DNA from: Octopus sinensis
Taxonomy: Eukaryota
Assembly: GCF_006345805.1 (NCBI RefSeq)
Contig: NW_021825879.1
Span: 1 to 14,258, forward strand
Direction of reading: 5' to 3'
Length of the DNA: 14,258 bases
The notes beneath the pieces were generated by a model. The model made no database searches, was not told the DNA's origin, and worked only from the letters and a program-made list of their open reading frames with translations. This document shows positions 548 through 14,227 of the stretch, one piece after another. The stretch's first letter is position 1, and every line of letters starts with the position of its first letter. The position numbers were made by a program, and so were the translations under genes.

Positions 548-1017
548 AGTTGTTTCAGTCATTTGACTGCGGCCATGCTGGAGTATTACGTTAGTCGAAT
601 AAATCGACCCCAGGACTTATTCTTTGCAAACCTACTTATTCTTTGTAAGCCTAGTACATATTCGATCAGTCTCTTGTGTCGAACCGCTAAGTTACGAGGA
701 CGTAAACTCACCAGCATCGGTTGTCAAGCGATGGTGGGAGTATAAACACAGACACACACACAAACATATATACATATATATATATATTCAGTTGGTAGAC
801 GGAAACTGAAAGAAGCCCGTCATAATTTACACATATATATTTATACTTATATATATGTTGTGACGGGCCTCCTTCAGCTTCCGTCTACCAAATCCACTCA
901 CAAGGCTTTGGTCGGCCCGAGGCTATACTAGAAGACACTTGCTCAAGGGGACACGCAGTGGGACTGAACCCAGAACCATGTGGTTGGTAAGCACGCTACT
1001 TACCACACAGCCACTCC
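548..1017 (-). mobile_element. tRNA-derived octopus SINE (near full length, with internal microsatellite)
   Basis: The minus strand starts ggagtggctgtgtggtaag, with Pol III A box TGGCTGTGTGG (1003-1013) and B box GGGTTCAGTCC (961-971). It continues through a body, an internal (TA/TG)n, and a tail ending cagcatggccgcagtcaaatgactgaaacaac. Homologous halves recur at 5561-5716 and 7341-7515. Confidence 0.9.
792..891. repeat. 31-bp inverted duplication inside the SINE
   Basis: 792-822 (ttggtagacggaaactgaaagaagcccgtca) is the reverse complement of 861-891, with 3 mismatches at 869, 872 and 878. The spacer also pairs (831-839 with 850-858). Confidence 0.92.
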
Positions 1018-3054: not shown

Positions 3055-3175
3055 GTATATATATATGCATGTATATATATTATATACATTTGCTATGTAT
3101 ATGTGTATGTATGTGTGTTTCTGTGTGTGCATGTGTGTGTGTGTGTTTTGTGTGTGTGTGTGTGTGTATGTGTTT
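3055..3175. repeat. (TA)n-(TG)n microsatellite
   Basis: Read directly. Confidence 0.9.
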
Positions 3176-3199
3176 GTGCTTATTTTACAATTCAGCCAT

Positions 3200-4538: not shown

Positions 4539-5560
4539 AGAAAAAACCTACACTGAACAGGTGAATAATCTATAGTTCCTCCAACCGGATTACAAATTTT
4601 GGTCTATAGCTGTTATTACTGGGACATGTAACGCGCTGCCTAATTACCAATCTTGAGAAATTTATCTTCTCAAAAAGTGAACGGAGAAAGTTGATTAGAA
4701 GACTATAGATTCAAGCCATCGCTAGAAGAGCAAAAATTTGTAAGACTTGTAAGTTTACCATTTGTATAGATATGCGCCTGTCTAGACGTAGAAATACATG
4801 CATGAGGATAGAAACATAAAACAAACATACAACTCTGCACATGCAGGGACTCTGAATATTGCACATATACAAACTCACATGCAAAAATACTCTGTTGGTC
4901 ATGCTAAAATTCCAATGAAAAAGCCTTCGATCTTAGAAAGGGCCTCTTTCTCTATGGGCAAGTAATCTTGAAATAAAACTGAACAATGGCATACATGCAC
5001 ACACACACACATACACACACACACACACACATACAGCGCGAATGAATAGGGGTGGGATAGATGTGCAAATTATTGAGCACGCCAGTGATAGTGTTATTGA
5101 TTAAGTGATGTAGTGATTGAAAGAATGTTTAGGTTTACTGTAGGAGTTCATTTGTAAAAGAACCAACCAATAACAATGTATATATGAGTGAGTGTATGTA
5201 TGAATACAATTGTAGTTATCCGTATTATAAAATGCCCAAGGCTACGTCGTGGGAGATCTTTGCCGTTAAGCCGGACTCTGACTGTAGACGAAGTAAGATT
5301 ACTTTCAAGAGAAATTGAAAATGGTTTGGTCTGTTGGGTAGTATTAGCAATTATAAAACACGTTAAAACAGATTTGTTCCTTTCGACTTGAGAAAAAAAG
5401 AAAACAAGGCCTCGCCTACACAAACTCTATATTCTTGGTTAGAAAAGCCTTTGGATATATCTCTGCTGAAGCAGAACATCAGCAGAATTATATTAGAGAG
5501 CGAAATTTCTTCTTTGTTATTACGATATTAGAGGAAAATACTTTTCAGATTAAAAAAAAA

Positions 5561-5716
5561 GAGGCTGTGTGGTCAGAAACTTGCCGCCGAACCACTTGGT
5601 TGCAGGTTCAGCCCCACTGCATGGCTCCTTGTGCAAGTGTCTTCTACTATAACCTCGAGCCGACCAGAATTCTTCTGAGTGGATTTGGAAGAAGGAAATT
5701 GAATGAAGTCCATCGT
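5561..5716 (+). mobile_element. 5' half of a degenerate SINE (same family as 548-1017)
   Basis: gaggctgtgtggt (A box), ggttcagcccc (B box), then caagtgtcttctactata..gagtggatttgg, collinear with the reverse complement of 861-1017. Ends in (TA)n. Confidence 0.85.
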
Positions 5717-5786
5717 GTATGTATATATATATATATATATATATGGCAGGGTCTGAAATGCCTCGTGAAAATATCTGTTCCGACTT

Positions 5787-5897
5787 GGCTATTTCTTGCT
5801 GAAGAATCTGAGGGCCTATGGAAGATTGGCTTGATTTAATTTAATCAGGTTAGTTTACCATTAAACAGCAGATGAAACGGTGCATCGTACAAGAAAT
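5787..5897 (+). ncRNA. Extended type I hammerhead ribozyme, intact core; predicted cleavage GUA/ after 5889
   Basis: Stem I AUUUCUUG (5791-5798)/CAAGAAAU (5890-5897), 8 bp perfect; CUGAAGA 5799-5805; stem II AUCUG (5806-5810)/CAGAU (5869-5873), a 7x7 internal loop and a hairpin 5818-5836/5843-5861; GAAA 5874-5877; near-palindromic stem III ACGGUGCAUCGU (5877-5888); A17 at 5889. Confidence 0.9.
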
Positions 5898-6275
5898 TAC
5901 AGGGTAAATGTTTTTTAAATTTTCTCCTGTTTACGGAATTAATCTTTATTTGCGGTTGAAGCTTTGGCTGTTATTTCTAGTGGGTGAATGGCCTATTATG
6001 GCCGTCCTTGATTGTTGATGTTGAACTTAAAAATGGTCTATGACTATTTAATTTTTTCCCACTAGGCCGCTGGTGGCAAAAAGAATTCTACAAAATTTTT
6101 TTTGCCACCCTATATTGATTAATTATGAATTTTCTGGTAATTCCGTAATGGAATCGACGGCTTATATTTATTTGCTGCCGATAAATTTGGCGCGAGTGCG
6201 ACGATTTGAAAATTTTAGGTCAGATATTACCTTGGCAGGGTCTGAAATGCCTCGTGAAAATATCTGTTCCGACTT

Positions 6276-6382
6276 GGCTATTTCTTGCTGAAGATCTGAG
6301 GGCCTATGGAAGATTGGCTTGATTTAATTTAATCAGGTAGTTTACCATTAACAGCAGATGAAACGGTGCATCGTAAAGAAAT
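6276..6382 (+). ncRNA. Second copy of the extended hammerhead, with junction deletions
   Basis: Same motif: CUGAAGA 6288-6294, GAAA 6360-6363, nominal A17 at 6375. It lacks one A at the core/stem II junction and the C just after the cleavage site. Confidence 0.75.
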
Positions 6383-6506
6383 TACAGGGTAAATGTTTTT
6401 TAAAATTTCTCCTGTTTACGGAATTAATCTTTATTTGCGGTTGAAGCTTTGGCTGTTATTTCTAGTGGGTGAATGGCCTATTATGGCCGTTCCTTGATTG
6501 TTGATG

Positions 6507-6548
<42 letters not shown>

Positions 6549-6579
6549 TATATACATACATACATATATAAAAAATTTA

Positions 6580-7917: not shown

Positions 7918-8071
7918 TCTATCTATCTATCCGCTCAGTCGAAGTCGACTCTCGGTCACTCGTTGGATCAGTGTCCTCCAGGCAGTTCTATCCTGGGCCG
8001 CTTCTTTCAGATTGGCTATGTCCATTCCGGTATCACTCTTGATGGTGTCAAGCCAGCGGATTCTTGGTCGG
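7918..8071 (-). pseudogene. 5'-truncated RTE-clade (BovB-like) LINE: ORF C-terminus and short repeat tail
   Basis: Minus-strand translation RPRIRWLDTIKSDTGMDIANLKEAAQDRTAWRTLIQRVTESRLRLSG* fits the RTE C-terminal GRP..RW.D..K.D...A.DR..WR motif. The stop overlaps an (ATAG)n tail. Confidence 0.85.
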
Positions 8072-8156
8072 TACACACCTGCTGATAAAAACCTGGAACA
8101 AGACTGTAAGTTGTCAACTGAAAAGTCAAAGTCTATGGAAAAAAGTAAGCTAAGAT

Positions 8157-8533
8157 GTGTGTGTGTGTGTGTGGTTGTGTGTGTATGCATGTATGTATAT
8201 GTCCATGTATGTATATATGTAGGTGTATATATGTATGTTTATATATGTATATATATATCTGTATATATGTATTTAAGCGATAGATCATCCCTTGGAATAC
8301 AATATCTGTGTATCTATCCATATATATATATATATTATATATGAATTATATTATATATATATATATATATATATCTATATGTATATATATGTGTTGTGTG
8401 TGTGGTATGTGTGTGTGTATCTTTATAGGTACGTATACATGTGTGTGCATGTTATAATAGCTACACATGCATATATGCGCATGTGTGTACAACACGCACA
8501 TAAACACACACGTTATATGTATGTATAATATAT

Positions 8534-8899: not shown

Positions 8900-8975
8900 T
8901 ACATTCATTCATTTATTCATTCACTCAATAACAGAGTCACTTAGTCACTCACTTATCTTCTCTCTCTCTCTCTCT

Positions 8976-9010
<35 letters not shown>
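8900..9010. repeat. (TTCA/TCAC)n followed by (CT)n
   Basis: Read directly. Confidence 0.85.
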
Positions 9011-9014
<4 letters not shown>

Positions 9015-9728: not shown

Positions 9729-10810
<1,082 letters not shown>

Positions 10811-11154
10811 GTAAGTGGAAGGCTGCGTAAACTAATACATTTAAACGTATAGGTTTGAACGTGAGACACTACACATCTTCCTATTAAAAGTAGATATTAT
10901 ATAATTTAATTCACCTGCCACATACATACTCTAATTTCCCATTGTGTATATGAATAGCTTTGCTATCGTTAATGGGATGCAATTTCAAAGTTATACGTTA
11001 TAATAATAAAAGATTAACATACATTTTTCCATCGATTTTTTATTTTTTTCTAGTTGATATAATATATATTCTTTACATTTTTTTTTCAACCCGATACTTT
11101 GGTTGTGCAGGAGTTGAAACTAACTCGGAATCTCCTCTTAACGTTTCTCAATTT

Positions 11155-11172
11155 CTCTCTCTCTCCCTCTCC

Positions 11173-11205
<33 letters not shown>

Positions 11206-11231
11206 CTTCTCTCTTTCTCTTTCTCTCTCTT

Positions 11232-11317
<86 letters not shown>

Positions 11318-12965: not shown

Positions 12966-13067
12966 GCGTCTGTATGTGTGTGCGCGCGCACATAAAAATA
13001 CAAAAGTATATAATTGTTTTGTGTCTTTAGTTCGTTGTCTTTGTGTGTCTGTGTCTAAGTATGTGTG

Positions 13068-13128
<61 letters not shown>

Positions 13129-13140
13129 GTGTGTGTGCGT
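12531..13140. repeat. Compound (TA)/(TATG)/(TG)n microsatellite
   Basis: Read directly; pure (TG)n around 13072-13125. Confidence 0.9.
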
Positions 13141-14227
13141 GCGTGTTTGTTTTTACGCAAATGCGAGTGTGTATGTTTGCGTGCGCATTATTTATTCAGG
13201 AAATAACCATAACGTTAGTGTTCCTGTCGGAACGGTGGGCCATTATCCACTAGACAGAAGAGAGAAAGATAGAACAGCGGAAAGGAAAAAAAAAATATAT
13301 AAAGAACGACAGTTTCGTTATTCACTTAAATAATAAAAAAATAGCCAAACAAAAAATCCCCAACAAATAATAATAATAATTTCTTTCGACATGACGCAAT
13401 TTGGTTTATTGATTCGCCATAGTGATTCTGAATATTCTAATAGAATAGAGTTGAAGGAAACGTTAACCAAAAACTGATTCCTAAATTGAATAAGGAAATT
13501 TCATACTGACTACATCGTTATATTGTGGGGTTGTCTTTTCTTTGGTTATTTACAGTCAAGGAATTTGGTCACCATTATGCCGTTCGTCTGGTGAAGATGT
13601 TCGCTTCATAAGAACCTTTGTTTCTTTTTCCTTCTAAATGCTTTTTTTTTTTCTTGCGTCACTCAAAATCAAATGCAAGTGTCTTCTCTCCTTAGAATCA
13701 GATTGATCTAATACCTGTGCTTAATAATTTAGAGGTGCAAATTGTGTGGTATTTACGCAGCTTTCATTTTATATATGCCCTTGCTTTTTTAGCTCCCGAT
13801 TTAATGTGTCGTCCAGTTGTCATTCGATGTCCTTATATTACTGAAGTATACACTGTAGCAAGCATTTGGACAACGCTTCCGGACTGAAGATAACTTAATA
13901 TTTTGAAGTGATTTTACTTGTGGGACTGATTCATTCAACACATTTCTTTTGCATGTTTCCTCATCGTCTGTTGAATAAACTCAGCATGTTAATTGATGGA
14001 GTGGTCTTAATATATTGCAGTGATTTGTCGACGTCGTTATTTTGTCGAATAAAATCTCTTACAGTTCTTGTACAGGTTCTGTATGTTCTGAGATCTCGTG
14101 TCGCAGGAATCAAACTTGTCTTCCATCTTTCTAGATTGATAAATAAAATACTACATGGATGGAGATTGCAGAGCGTCAAATGGAATGCAATGCGGTTTCT
14201 GTACTGTCGCGCATAGCGCTGTGAATT

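What the first reader, a model, noticed from the sequence alone, without database searches (positions are those of the whole stretch)
5744..6510. Candidate cephalopod retrozyme: 489-nt tandem monomer with an intact extended type I hammerhead
Seen: 1.57 tandem copies, each with a hammerhead. Copy 1 has every core nucleotide (CUGAAGA, GAAA, GUA), an 8-bp perfect stem I, a near-palindromic stem III and a long stem II. The distal stem II pairs over 19 positions with one mismatch and five G-U wobbles, which works only on the + strand RNA. Cleavage after 5889 and 6375 would release a 486-nt monomer. Established: non-LTR retrozymes, and the related newt satellite 2, Schistosoma Sm-alpha and Dolichopoda pDo500 repeats, are tandem non-coding monomers with type I hammerheads; retrozymes yield circular RNAs and are thought to be mobilised by Penelope-like elements. 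Inference: this is such an element, at the large end of the size range, and the greater-than-unit length suggests reverse transcription of a circular or multimeric template. I do not know of a characterised octopus example.
Basis: partly seen in the sequence, partly recalled or inferred. Interest (0 to 1): 0.92.

Follow-up and report, generated by a model that had tools for sequence, protein, structure and literature searches.

The report
Hammerhead-ribozyme retroelement inserted in a TA microsatellite
A 767-bp non-coding insert made of 1.57 head-to-tail copies of a 489-bp unit carries a convincing self-cleaving hammerhead RNA motif, so it is most likely an ordinary but uncatalogued member of the known animal "retrozyme" / Penelope-derived parasitic elements, not a new kind of thing.

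Summary
Positions 5744-6510 are 1.57 tandem copies of a 489-nt non-coding unit, 97.5% identical. Copy 1 has a complete type I hammerhead at 5791-5897: 8-bp helix I, CUGAAGA, a 68-nt helix II with five G-U pairs, GAAA, a 4-bp helix III with a UGCA loop, and A17 at 5889.

It is the only such motif in the window. None appeared in 300 shuffles. Its canonical fold lies 0.5 kcal/mol from the MFE. Hammerhead_1 is the best Rfam match, but at 15.9 bits against a gathering score of 34.

Copy 2 has lost nucleotides 10.1 and 1.1 and gets no Rfam match, so "each with a hammerhead" is overstated.

The insert sits inside a (TA)n tract that forms the tail of a SINE-like repeat. Its layout (281 nt repeated around 208 nt) matches a Penelope-type partial tandem with the ribozyme in the pseudo-LTR.

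Unit size, GC content (37%), lack of coding capacity and strong self-pairing all fit published non-LTR retrozymes.

I could not reach any animal genome, so family copy number, core conservation, cleavage, circular RNA and the cephalopod origin remain untested.

Verdict: probable new member of a known kind with an unusually long helix II. Interest is modest.

The parts
5555..5720 (+). SINE-like repeat whose TA-rich 3' stretch is the target of the insertion
   Evidence: A second copy, 79% identical, lies at 862-1015 on the - strand. The alignment shows both copies run into a TA stretch after ...GAAG.CC.TC. No tRNA is called by ARAGORN.
5718..5744 (.). Left flank: (TA)13 microsatellite, the left half of the target
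   Evidence: TRF row 5718-5744. T5744 is shared between the microsatellite and the unit (D3).
5744..6232 (+). Unit 1, a complete 489-nt monomer: X = 5744-6024 (repeated part, the pseudo-LTR) and Y = 6025-6232 (unique part)
   Evidence: GC is 36.6%. There is no Pfam domain and the only ORF is a 72-aa GTG ORF. As a circle it folds at -135.1 kcal/mol, z -4.5, 60% paired.
5791..5897 (+). Intact type I hammerhead ribozyme motif (HHR-1); predicted cleavage between 5889 and 5890
   Evidence: Descriptor hit with stems 8/5/4. Rfam RF00163 covers the full model 1-45 at 15.9 bits, E 0.21, and is the best family. The canonical structure is -31.5 kcal/mol against an MFE of -32.0.
5799..5805 (+). Core box C3-A9, CUGAAGA
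   Evidence: alignment
5806..5873 (+). Helix II, 68 nt: 5 bp (AUCUG/CAGAU, with A10.1-U11.1), a 7x7 internal loop, 4 bp, an A*A mismatch, 14 bp with five G-U pairs, and loop UAAUUU
   Evidence: Pair list. Validated retrozyme hammerheads have a helix II span of only 13-14 nt.
5874..5889 (+). GAAA box (G12-A15.1), helix III ACGG/UCGU with palindromic loop UGCA, and A17
6072..6109 (+). 16-bp hairpin inside the unique part Y (GGUGGCAAAAAGAAUU / AAUUUUUUUUGCCACC)
   Evidence: Self-hit on the minus strand. It forms a stem in the circular MFE.
6233..6510 (+). Unit 2, a partial copy covering unit positions 1-281 (second copy of X). It ends at ...GATGGTGA and abuts the (AT)n tract.
6280..6382 (+). Damaged hammerhead copy (HHR-2). 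The CUGAAGA, GAAA and GUA boxes are kept, but A10.1, C1.1 and two bases of distal helix II are deleted.
   Evidence: Alignment columns 62, 107, 120 and 147. Not found by the descriptor. No Rfam hit at E<=10. Local MFE is -27.1 against -32.0 for copy 1.
6510..6570 (.). Right flank: (AT)30 microsatellite, the right half of the target
   Evidence: TRF row 6510-6570

Best explanation
This is one insertion of a small non-autonomous retroelement of the non-LTR retrozyme kind, that is, a non-coding derivative or parasite of Penelope-like elements.

Shown:
- A 767-bp insert interrupts a (TA)n tract.
- It consists of a 281-nt segment X, a 208-nt segment Y and X again.
- X carries a complete type I hammerhead motif on the + strand.

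Inferred mechanism:
- A master copy elsewhere is transcribed as a multimer.
- The hammerhead cleaves after A17 to release monomers of about 489 nt with 5'-OH and 2',3'-cyclic phosphate ends.
- A host tRNA ligase (RtcB-type) circularises them into a compact, about 60% base-paired RNA.
- A reverse transcriptase supplied in trans copies more than one turn of this circle, or an uncleaved multimer, from a nick in a TA microsatellite. This most likely comes from a GIY-YIG Penelope-like element with a microsatellite bias.
- The result is a greater-than-unit head-to-tail insert whose ends (unit positions 1 and 281) are unrelated to the cleavage site (146/147).

Read in Penelope terms, the insert is a 5'-truncated upstream copy (X) followed by a full copy (Y-X), so X is a pseudo-LTR containing the ribozyme.

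This particular locus is probably a product rather than a source. Its second ribozyme is damaged, so it could not release a monomer efficiently unless the copy-2 deletions are assembly errors.
For: The tandem structure and its exact phase at the left boundary are shown.

Hammerhead evidence:
- all core nucleotides and the three helices are present
- it is the only hit in the window
- none in 300 shuffles, and none at these stem lengths in 40 Mb of random sequence
- Hammerhead_1 is the top Rfam family, aligned end to end
- the canonical fold is within 0.5 kcal/mol of the MFE
- the + strand is 13 kcal/mol more stable than the - strand, with five G-U pairs

The same descriptor recovers the hammerheads of three experimentally validated retrozymes: coral, mussel and axolotl Ax330.

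Class features match PMC7229834: tandem units of 150-450 bp, GC below 45-50%, no LTR/PBS/PPT, and highly self-paired circles. The candidate has 489 bp, GC 0.37 (the same as mussel Mg353), 60% paired and z -4.5. Consensus lengths of 51-972 bp and descent from Penelope pseudo-LTRs are reported in bioRxiv 10.64898/2026.07.22.740005.

Partial tandems forming pLTRs, hammerheads in pLTRs, a (TA)n insertion bias that hides target-site duplications, and non-autonomous head-to-tail derivatives are all described in PMC8557442. More-than-unit reverse transcription of circles was proposed in PMC4209133.

The window has no coding capacity.
Against: - Only one locus was seen, and there is no other copy in the 14-kb window.
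- No relative turned up in any reachable collection. These collections do not hold animal genomes, so this says little either way.
- The Rfam score is below gathering (15.9 vs 34 bits).
- Helix II is about five times longer than in validated retrozyme hammerheads, and helix I is 8 uninterrupted pairs, so the canonical loop 1-loop 2 contact is not evident (PMC4209133).
- The 10.1-11.1 pair is A-U rather than the strongly conserved G-C (PMC3088659).
- Copy 2 is damaged.
- TA microsatellite makes up 6-9% of this window, so landing in one is only weak evidence for targeting.
- At relaxed stem lengths (>=5/4/3), chance hammerhead-like motifs would number in the hundreds in a Gb-sized genome (extrapolated).
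- No Penelope RT or EN remnant is present in the window.
Confidence: 0.68

Rival explanations
1. This is an internally deleted remnant of an autonomous Penelope-like element, not a member of a dedicated retrozyme family. X would be the pseudo-LTR of a coding PLE and Y what is left of its body after deletion. It would be a single dead copy that never made circular RNA as part of its own life cycle.
For: The X-Y-X layout with the hammerhead in the repeated part is exactly the PLE pLTR arrangement (PMC8557442; PMC4209133). Only one locus was seen. Retrozymes and pLTRs are reported to be sister sequences, so the two are hard to tell apart from a single copy.
Against: Y (208 nt) shows no RT or EN remnant, and no Pfam hit exists anywhere in the window. 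Metazoan PLE hammerheads are usually minimal, lacking helix III (PMC4209133; PMC7229834), whereas this one has a stable 4-bp helix III like retrozyme hammerheads. The whole unit is strongly structured as a circle.
Confidence: 0.14
2. The element is real, but a microsatellite-targeting LINE (Dong/R4-type) or another non-LTR reverse transcriptase mobilised it, not a Penelope-like element.
For: Cervera and de la Pena leave LINEs open as mobilisers (PMC7229834). If the host is an octopus, Dong-R4 is the most active LINE group there, with 1129 recent insertions against 336 for PLEs (PMC13282606). The insertion lies in a TA microsatellite.
Against: There is no poly(A) or simple-repeat 3' tail belonging to the element. 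Greater-than-unit head-to-tail inserts and ribozyme-bearing terminal repeats are hallmarks of PLEs, not LINE-driven SINEs. Co-distribution of retrozymes with PLEs is reported.
Confidence: 0.08
3. The hammerhead is a chance motif inside an ordinary local tandem duplication made by replication slippage or unequal exchange. No RNA-level function or retrotransposition is involved.
For: Chance motifs exist at genome scale with relaxed stems: 3 per 40 Mb at >=5/4/3. The Rfam score is below gathering. No family was seen. Copy 2 is not conserved.
Against: No hit at the observed stem lengths occurred in 40 Mb. The additional 19-position distal helix with strand-specific G-U pairs, and z -4.0 on the + strand only, are not needed for a chance core match. 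The duplication phase coincides with the microsatellite boundary, which a DNA-level duplication of a resident sequence would not predict. The whole set of retrozyme traits coincides.
Confidence: 0.06
4. The 1.57-copy structure is an assembly artefact. The true locus holds one monomer or a different copy number, and the five one-base indels between the copies are consensus errors.
For: Five of the seven differences between the copies are single-base indels, four of them in short homopolymer runs. This is the typical error type of long-read consensus. PLE-type tandem structures are known to trouble assemblies (PMC8557442).
Against: There are also two substitutions. The junction Y-to-X at 6232/6233 is clean, and the second copy ends at a different point from the first. 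Even if this were true, the hammerhead-bearing unit would remain.
Confidence: 0.04

Closest known systems
Metazoan non-LTR retrozymes (Cervera and de la Pena 2020, PMC7229834), e.g. Mytilus galloprovincialis Mg353 and Acropora millepora Amil224
   Same: Shared features are a non-coding head-to-tail unit of a few hundred bp, a type I hammerhead on one strand, and low GC (0.37, identical to Mg353). There are no LTR/PBS/PPT features. The predicted circle is compact and self-paired. Helix III (ACG...CGU) is stable enough for monomeric cleavage. My descriptor finds the validated hammerheads in three of four constructs, and the candidate, with the same rules.
   Different: There is no sequence similarity. 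Helix II spans 68 nt against 13-14 nt. Helix I is 8 uninterrupted pairs instead of 6 pairs plus loop 1. The 10.1-11.1 pair is A-U. Only 1.57 copies are present, one of them damaged. The unit of 489 nt is above the 150-450 bp quoted there but inside the 51-972 bp range of the 2026 preprint. Expression and circularity are untested.
Penelope-like elements and their pseudo-LTR hammerheads (PMC4209133; PMC8557442)
   Same: Shared features are the partial tandem layout (truncated copy plus full copy) that creates a direct terminal repeat carrying the hammerhead, insertion into a (TA)n microsatellite with no discernible target duplication, and the existence of non-autonomous head-to-tail derivatives.
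   Different: There is no RT or GIY-YIG ORF. The ribozyme has a canonical 4-bp helix III rather than the minimal helix-III-less form usual in metazoan PLEs. No 30-40-bp tail extension or adjacent inverted copy was seen.
Newt satellite 2, Schistosoma Sm-alpha and Dolichopoda pDo500 hammerhead repeats
   Same: All are tandem or dispersed non-coding repeats of about 330-500 bp with type I hammerheads and a palindromic helix III/loop 3 that permits a dimeric active form (PMC6155905; PMC3088659).
   Different: Those are high-copy families with demonstrated transcription and cleavage. Here there is one locus and no experiment. Helix III here is longer (4 bp), so a dimer is not required.
Rfam RF00163 Hammerhead_1
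   Same: The full-length alignment to model positions 1-45 has every conserved core position matched, and it is the best-scoring family for the region.
   Different: The score is 15.9 bits against a gathering score of 34, because of a 58-nt insertion in helix II and A-U at 10.1-11.1. It is not found in a whole-window search.

Membership tests
Hammerhead ribozyme, type I | Conserved core C3-U4-G5-A6-N7-G8-A9, G12-A13-A14, A15.1-U16.1 and H17 (not G) | tested here: met
   CUGAAGA at 5799-5805, GAAA at 5874-5877, A5877-U5888 and A5889. Copy 2 keeps these boxes.
Hammerhead ribozyme, type I | Three helices around the core, with helix I open and helices II and III closed (type I topology) | tested here: met
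   Helix I has 8 bp, helix II 5 bp plus an extension, helix III 4 bp plus a tetraloop. The canonical structure is -31.5 kcal/mol against an MFE of -32.0.
Hammerhead ribozyme, type I | Base pair at 10.1-11.1, G-C in the consensus | tested here: inconclusive
   It is paired, but as A-U. PMC3088659 calls this the most conserved pair after 15.1-16.1, and even U-U is tolerated there. In copy 2 the 10.1 base is deleted.
Hammerhead ribozyme, type I | Score at or above the Rfam RF00163 gathering threshold | tested here: not met
   15.9 bits against 34, E 0.21 in a 126-nt search. No hit in the whole-window or 1.2-kb searches. Copy 2 gives no hit at all.
Hammerhead ribozyme, type I | Loop 1-loop 2 tertiary contact of canonical metazoan type I motifs (helix I 6 bp, helix II 4 bp) | tested here: inconclusive
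   There is no terminal loop 2 at the usual distance. A 7x7 internal loop follows 5 bp of helix II, and helix I is 8 uninterrupted pairs. Whether the internal loop substitutes cannot be judged from sequence.
Hammerhead ribozyme, type I | Conservation and covariation of the helices across homologues | not testable with these tools
   No homologue was obtainable. The only paralogue, copy 2, differs by deletions that break pairs.
Hammerhead ribozyme, type I | Site-specific self-cleavage | not testable with these tools
   This needs in vitro transcription.
Non-LTR retrozyme | Head-to-tail tandem repeat of a short non-coding unit (150-450 bp; 51-972 bp in the 2026 survey) | tested here: met
   1.57 copies of 489 nt. 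No Pfam domain.
Non-LTR retrozyme | A type I hammerhead in each unit, so that double cleavage releases a monomer | tested here: inconclusive
   The copy 1 motif is intact and the copy 2 motif is damaged.
Non-LTR retrozyme | Low GC content (below 45-50%) and absence of LTR/PBS/PPT | tested here: met
   GC is 36.6%. The only direct repeat is the tandem itself.
Non-LTR retrozyme | Monomer folds into a compact, highly self-paired circle | tested here: met
   The circular MFE is -135.1 kcal/mol, z -4.5, 60% paired. Validated examples are 66-71% paired. This is a prediction only.
Non-LTR retrozyme | Dispersed multicopy family in the genome | not testable with these tools
   No other copy in the window. 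No animal genome collection is available.
Non-LTR retrozyme | Expression as linear and circular monomer RNA | not testable with these tools
   No transcriptome access.
Penelope-like element (non-autonomous derivative) | Partial tandem forming a pseudo-LTR that contains the hammerhead | tested here: met
   X (281 nt) is repeated around Y (208 nt), and the hammerhead lies inside X.
Penelope-like element (non-autonomous derivative) | Insertion into a microsatellite, commonly (TA)n, obscuring target-site duplications | tested here: met
   The insert is flanked by (TA)13 and (AT)30. The background is high: 6-9% of the window is perfect TA repeat, so the support is weak.
Penelope-like element (non-autonomous derivative) | Sequence similarity of the 3' end or pLTR to an autonomous PLE of the same genome | not testable with these tools
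   No PLE sequence of the host is available, and none is present in the window.
Penelope-like element (autonomous) | ORF with RT and GIY-YIG endonuclease | tested here: not met
   No such ORF or Pfam match anywhere in the window.

The most novel reading that the evidence does not exclude
The unit may represent an uncatalogued, lineage-specific retrozyme family whose hammerhead replaces the canonical short helix II and loop 2 with a 68-nt, G-U-rich helix. Such a ribozyme would still cleave, with an internal loop taking over the tertiary contact. It would systematically escape Rfam-threshold annotation, so hammerhead and retrozyme censuses in this lineage would be undercounts.

A more speculative extension concerns the five G-U pairs clustered in the 14-bp distal helix. 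They could be A-to-G footprints of ADAR editing of a double-stranded RNA intermediate that were fixed by reverse transcription. That would be direct evidence of an RNA-circle life cycle in a heavily editing host.
Probability: 0.3. Interest if true: 0.55.

Novelty: new member of a known kind. Interest (0 to 1): 0.32.

Why it matters
If confirmed, this adds a mollusc lineage, probably an octopus, to the hosts of ribozyme-bearing circular-RNA retroelements.

It is also a worked example of a greater-than-unit insert sitting in a TA microsatellite. That fits the recent proposal that animal retrozymes are non-autonomous Penelope derivatives.

The practical point is that a hammerhead with a long helix II scores far below the Rfam gathering threshold. 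Genome annotations based on that threshold will therefore miss such families.

It does not open a new question. The class, its ribozyme and its proposed mobilisation are already described.

Tried and rejected
Searches that found nothing useful:
- Rfam at gathering threshold on the whole window: no hit.
- Rfam at E<=10 on 1.2 kb: only microsatellite-driven mir-297-type chance matches, no ribozyme.
- Exact-pattern scans for the ribozyme 3' half and 5' half: viral contigs 0; bacterial/archaeal genomes 0.
- The same scan on metagenomes gave 7 loci that share only the 19-24-nt query word, have unrelated composition, and are chance.

Attempts to reach eukaryote assemblies through the protein index:
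- The 72-aa ORF that spans the Y-X junction gave nothing.
- A LINE-like ORF at 7930-8190 (-) gave nothing.
- Exact look-ups of two window ORFs gave nothing.
- The host taxon and the family copy number therefore stay unverified.

Other negative results:
- Pfam on ten window ORFs: none.
- ARAGORN: none.
- TRF does not report the 489-nt period.
- BLASTN against four experimentally validated retrozymes from the supplement of PMC7229834: no similarity.

Considered and rejected:
- A minus-strand ribozyme. There is no descriptor hit, and the fold z is -1.4.
- The unit being part of the upstream SINE. The second SINE copy continues differently after its TA stretch.
- Pol III A/B boxes in the unit. Inspection by eye found only partial matches in the wrong order.
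Full report
**1. What is in the sequence**

Positions 5744-6510 are a head-to-tail repeat. Copy 1 is 5744-6232 (489 nt). Copy 2 is 6233-6510 (278 nt, unit positions 1-281). The two differ by five single-base indels and two substitutions, 97.5% identity. TRF does not list it, presumably because there are fewer than two copies. No other copy or fragment of the unit occurs in the 14,258-base window. The only further self-match is an internal 16-bp hairpin at 6072-6109. The unit has 36.6% GC against 31.9% for the window. It has no meaningful ORF: the longest is a 72-aa GTG ORF, and no ORF in the window has a Pfam match.

**2. The hammerhead in copy 1**

Reading with standard hammerhead numbering gives:
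- helix I: 5791-5798 (AUUUCUUG) pairs with 5890-5897 (CAAGAAAU), eight Watson-Crick pairs
- C3-A9: CUGAAGA at 5799-5805
- helix II: 5806-5873
- G12-A15.1: GAAA at 5874-5877
- helix III: ACGG/UCGU closed by the palindromic loop UGCA (5877-5888)
- A17 at 5889, with the scissile bond between 5889 and 5890

Helix II has five proximal pairs (AUCUG/CAGAU, so 10.1-11.1 is A-U), a symmetric 7x7 internal loop, four pairs, an A*A mismatch, and fourteen pairs closed by UAAUUU. Five of its 24 pairs are G-U, all in the distal fourteen.

**3. Is it more than chance?**

- My type I descriptor requires CUGANGA, helix II, GAAA, helix III closed by A15.1-U16.1, H17 and helix I. It finds this site and no other on either strand.
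- It found nothing in 300 dinucleotide-preserving shuffles of the window at stems >=4/3/2.
- In 40 Mb of first-order random sequence with the unit's composition there were 64 hits at >=4/3/2, 3 at >=5/4/3 and none at the observed 8/5/4.
- Per window this is far below 0.01.
- Per Gb-sized genome, chance hits at relaxed stems would number in the hundreds. Extrapolating, a handful might reach the observed stem lengths. The motif alone is therefore not proof at genome scale.

The following features add independent weight:
- The 113-nt region folds at -32.0 kcal/mol on the + strand (z -4.0, 0 of 200 shuffles as good) against -19.1 (z -1.4) on the - strand.
- The canonical hammerhead secondary structure costs only 0.5 kcal/mol relative to the MFE.
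- In a narrow, permissive Rfam search the best family is RF00163 Hammerhead_1, aligned over the full model 1-45 with all core positions matched.
- The same descriptor recovers the ribozymes of three experimentally validated retrozymes.

**4. Weak points of the ribozyme call**

- The Rfam score is 15.9 bits (E 0.21) against a gathering score of 34. The motif is invisible in whole-window and 1.2-kb searches.
- The loss of score comes mostly from a 58-nt insertion in helix II.
- Canonical metazoan type I hammerheads have helix I of 6 bp and helix II of 4 bp, whose loops touch (PMC4209133).
- The validated coral, mussel and axolotl motifs have a helix II span of 13-14 nt, against 68 nt here.
- The 10.1-11.1 pair is A-U rather than the strongly conserved G-C (PMC3088659).
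- Whether the internal loop of helix II can supply the tertiary contact cannot be decided from sequence.

**5. Copy 2**

The second copy keeps CUGAAGA (6288-6294), GAAA (6360-6363) and GUA (6373-6375). It lacks A10.1 and C1.1 and two bases of distal helix II (alignment columns 62, 147, 107, 120). It fails the descriptor, gets no Rfam hammerhead match at E<=10 under the settings that found copy 1, and folds 5 kcal/mol less well. "Each with a hammerhead" is therefore overstated, and release of a 486-nt monomer from this locus is doubtful.

Five of the seven inter-copy differences are one-base indels, four of them in short homopolymer runs. That pattern is also what long-read consensus errors look like, so read-level verification is needed.

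**6. Context**

The insert is bounded on the left by (TA)13 (5718-5744) and on the right by (AT)30 (6510-6570). The left tract is the TA-rich stretch that follows a SINE-like repeat at 5555-5720. A second copy of that repeat (862-1015, - strand, 79% identical) runs into a TA stretch at the same point. The microsatellite therefore pre-dated the insertion, and the element split it.

No target-site duplication can be recognised in such a target. Perfect (TA)>=8 covers 6% of the window and (TA)>=5 covers 9%, so the location is only weak evidence (p about 0.06-0.09) for targeting.

The repeat phase begins exactly at the left boundary and runs through the Y-X junction without interruption. This is what one expects if the whole 767 bp was made in one copying event. 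It is not expected from a later DNA-level duplication of a resident monomer (inference).

**7. What it most likely is and how it works**

The anatomy is X (281 nt, with the hammerhead), then Y (208 nt), then X. In the vocabulary of Penelope-like elements this is a 5'-truncated copy followed by a full copy, which creates a pseudo-LTR that contains the ribozyme (PMC8557442; PMC4209133). In the vocabulary of Cervera and de la Pena it is a non-LTR retrozyme: a short, low-GC, non-coding tandem unit with a type I hammerhead (PMC7229834). A 2026 preprint argues that the two are the same lineage, with retrozymes descending from PLE pseudo-LTRs, and reports consensus lengths of 51-972 bp.

The predicted circular monomer is compact: -135.1 kcal/mol, z -4.5, 60% paired. 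Validated retrozymes folded the same way are 66-71% paired.

The inferred life cycle is:
1. A competent multimeric master copy is transcribed.
2. The hammerhead cleaves after A17.
3. A host RNA ligase circularises the monomer.
4. A trans-acting reverse transcriptase copies more than one turn from a nick in a TA microsatellite.

The ends of the insert (unit positions 1 and 281) do not coincide with the cleavage site (146/147). That argues against a cleaved linear monomer as template and for a circle or an uncleaved multimer.

A PLE is the favoured mobiliser, for three reasons: the greater-than-unit tandem, the ribozyme in the terminal repeat, and the (TA)n bias reported for Naiad and Neptune PLEs. 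A microsatellite-targeting LINE is a minor alternative.

None of the RNA steps is shown here.

**8. Comparison with what is known, and novelty**

- 235 Hammerhead_1 loci are annotated in the giant squid genome (PMC6962438).
- Penelope elements are listed among recently active repeats in Octopus vulgaris (PMC13282606).
- I found no paper in the held library that describes an octopus or cephalopod retrozyme.

The element is thus an expected but uncatalogued member of a known class. Its distinctive feature is the very long helix II, which pushes it below the Rfam threshold.

The attribution to a cephalopod rests only on my recollection that the flanking SINE-like repeat resembles an abundant octopus repeat. 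No tool result confirms it.

**9. Limits**

The collections I could scan hold viral, metagenomic and prokaryotic DNA, not animal genomes. All searches for relatives were empty or gave chance words.

Noticed in passing
window 792-891: A 49-nt-arm palindrome (80% complementary). Two 3' ends of the SINE-like repeat (TTGGTAGACGGAAACTGAAAGAAGCCCGTC...) meet tail to tail across a TA-rich centre. This suggests that the TA tails of these repeats are themselves recurrent insertion targets in this genome.
   Followed up: partly
window 5555-5720 (+) and 862-1015 (-): Two copies of a SINE-like repeat, 79% identical, each followed by a TA stretch. ARAGORN calls no tRNA in them. From memory they resemble an abundant octopus repeat, which is the only hint to the host taxon.
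   Followed up: partly
window 7927-8190 (-): An 87-aa ORF ends ...RPRIRWLDTIKSDTGMDIANLKEAAQDRTAWRTLIQRV. From memory this looks like the C-terminal tail of a LINE ORF2. It has no Pfam match and no hit in the protein index.
   Followed up: partly
window 9734-10810: A TA-dominated imperfect microsatellite of about 1.08 kb (TRF period 2, 536 copies, 67% matches). Overall the window has 79 TRF rows and about 68% A+T, and 6-9% of it is perfect (TA)n.
   Followed up: no
window 6495-6569 and 5714-5745: Sub-threshold Rfam matches to mir-297, mir-1277 and mir-3149 (best 40 bits against a gathering score of 90). They are produced by the TA/TG microsatellites flanking the insert and are low-complexity chance matches, not miRNA genes.
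   Followed up: yes
window 6072-6109: A strong 16-bp hairpin (GGTGGCAAAAAGAATT...AATTTTTTTTGCCACC) in the unique part of the unit. It persists in the circular MFE. Its role is unknown.
   Followed up: no
window 11154-11281 and 8959-9011: (TC)n microsatellites of 128 and 53 bp, and further (TG)n/(CA)n tracts (3102-3178, 13042-13150). They were noted only as context for microsatellite-targeting elements.
   Followed up: no
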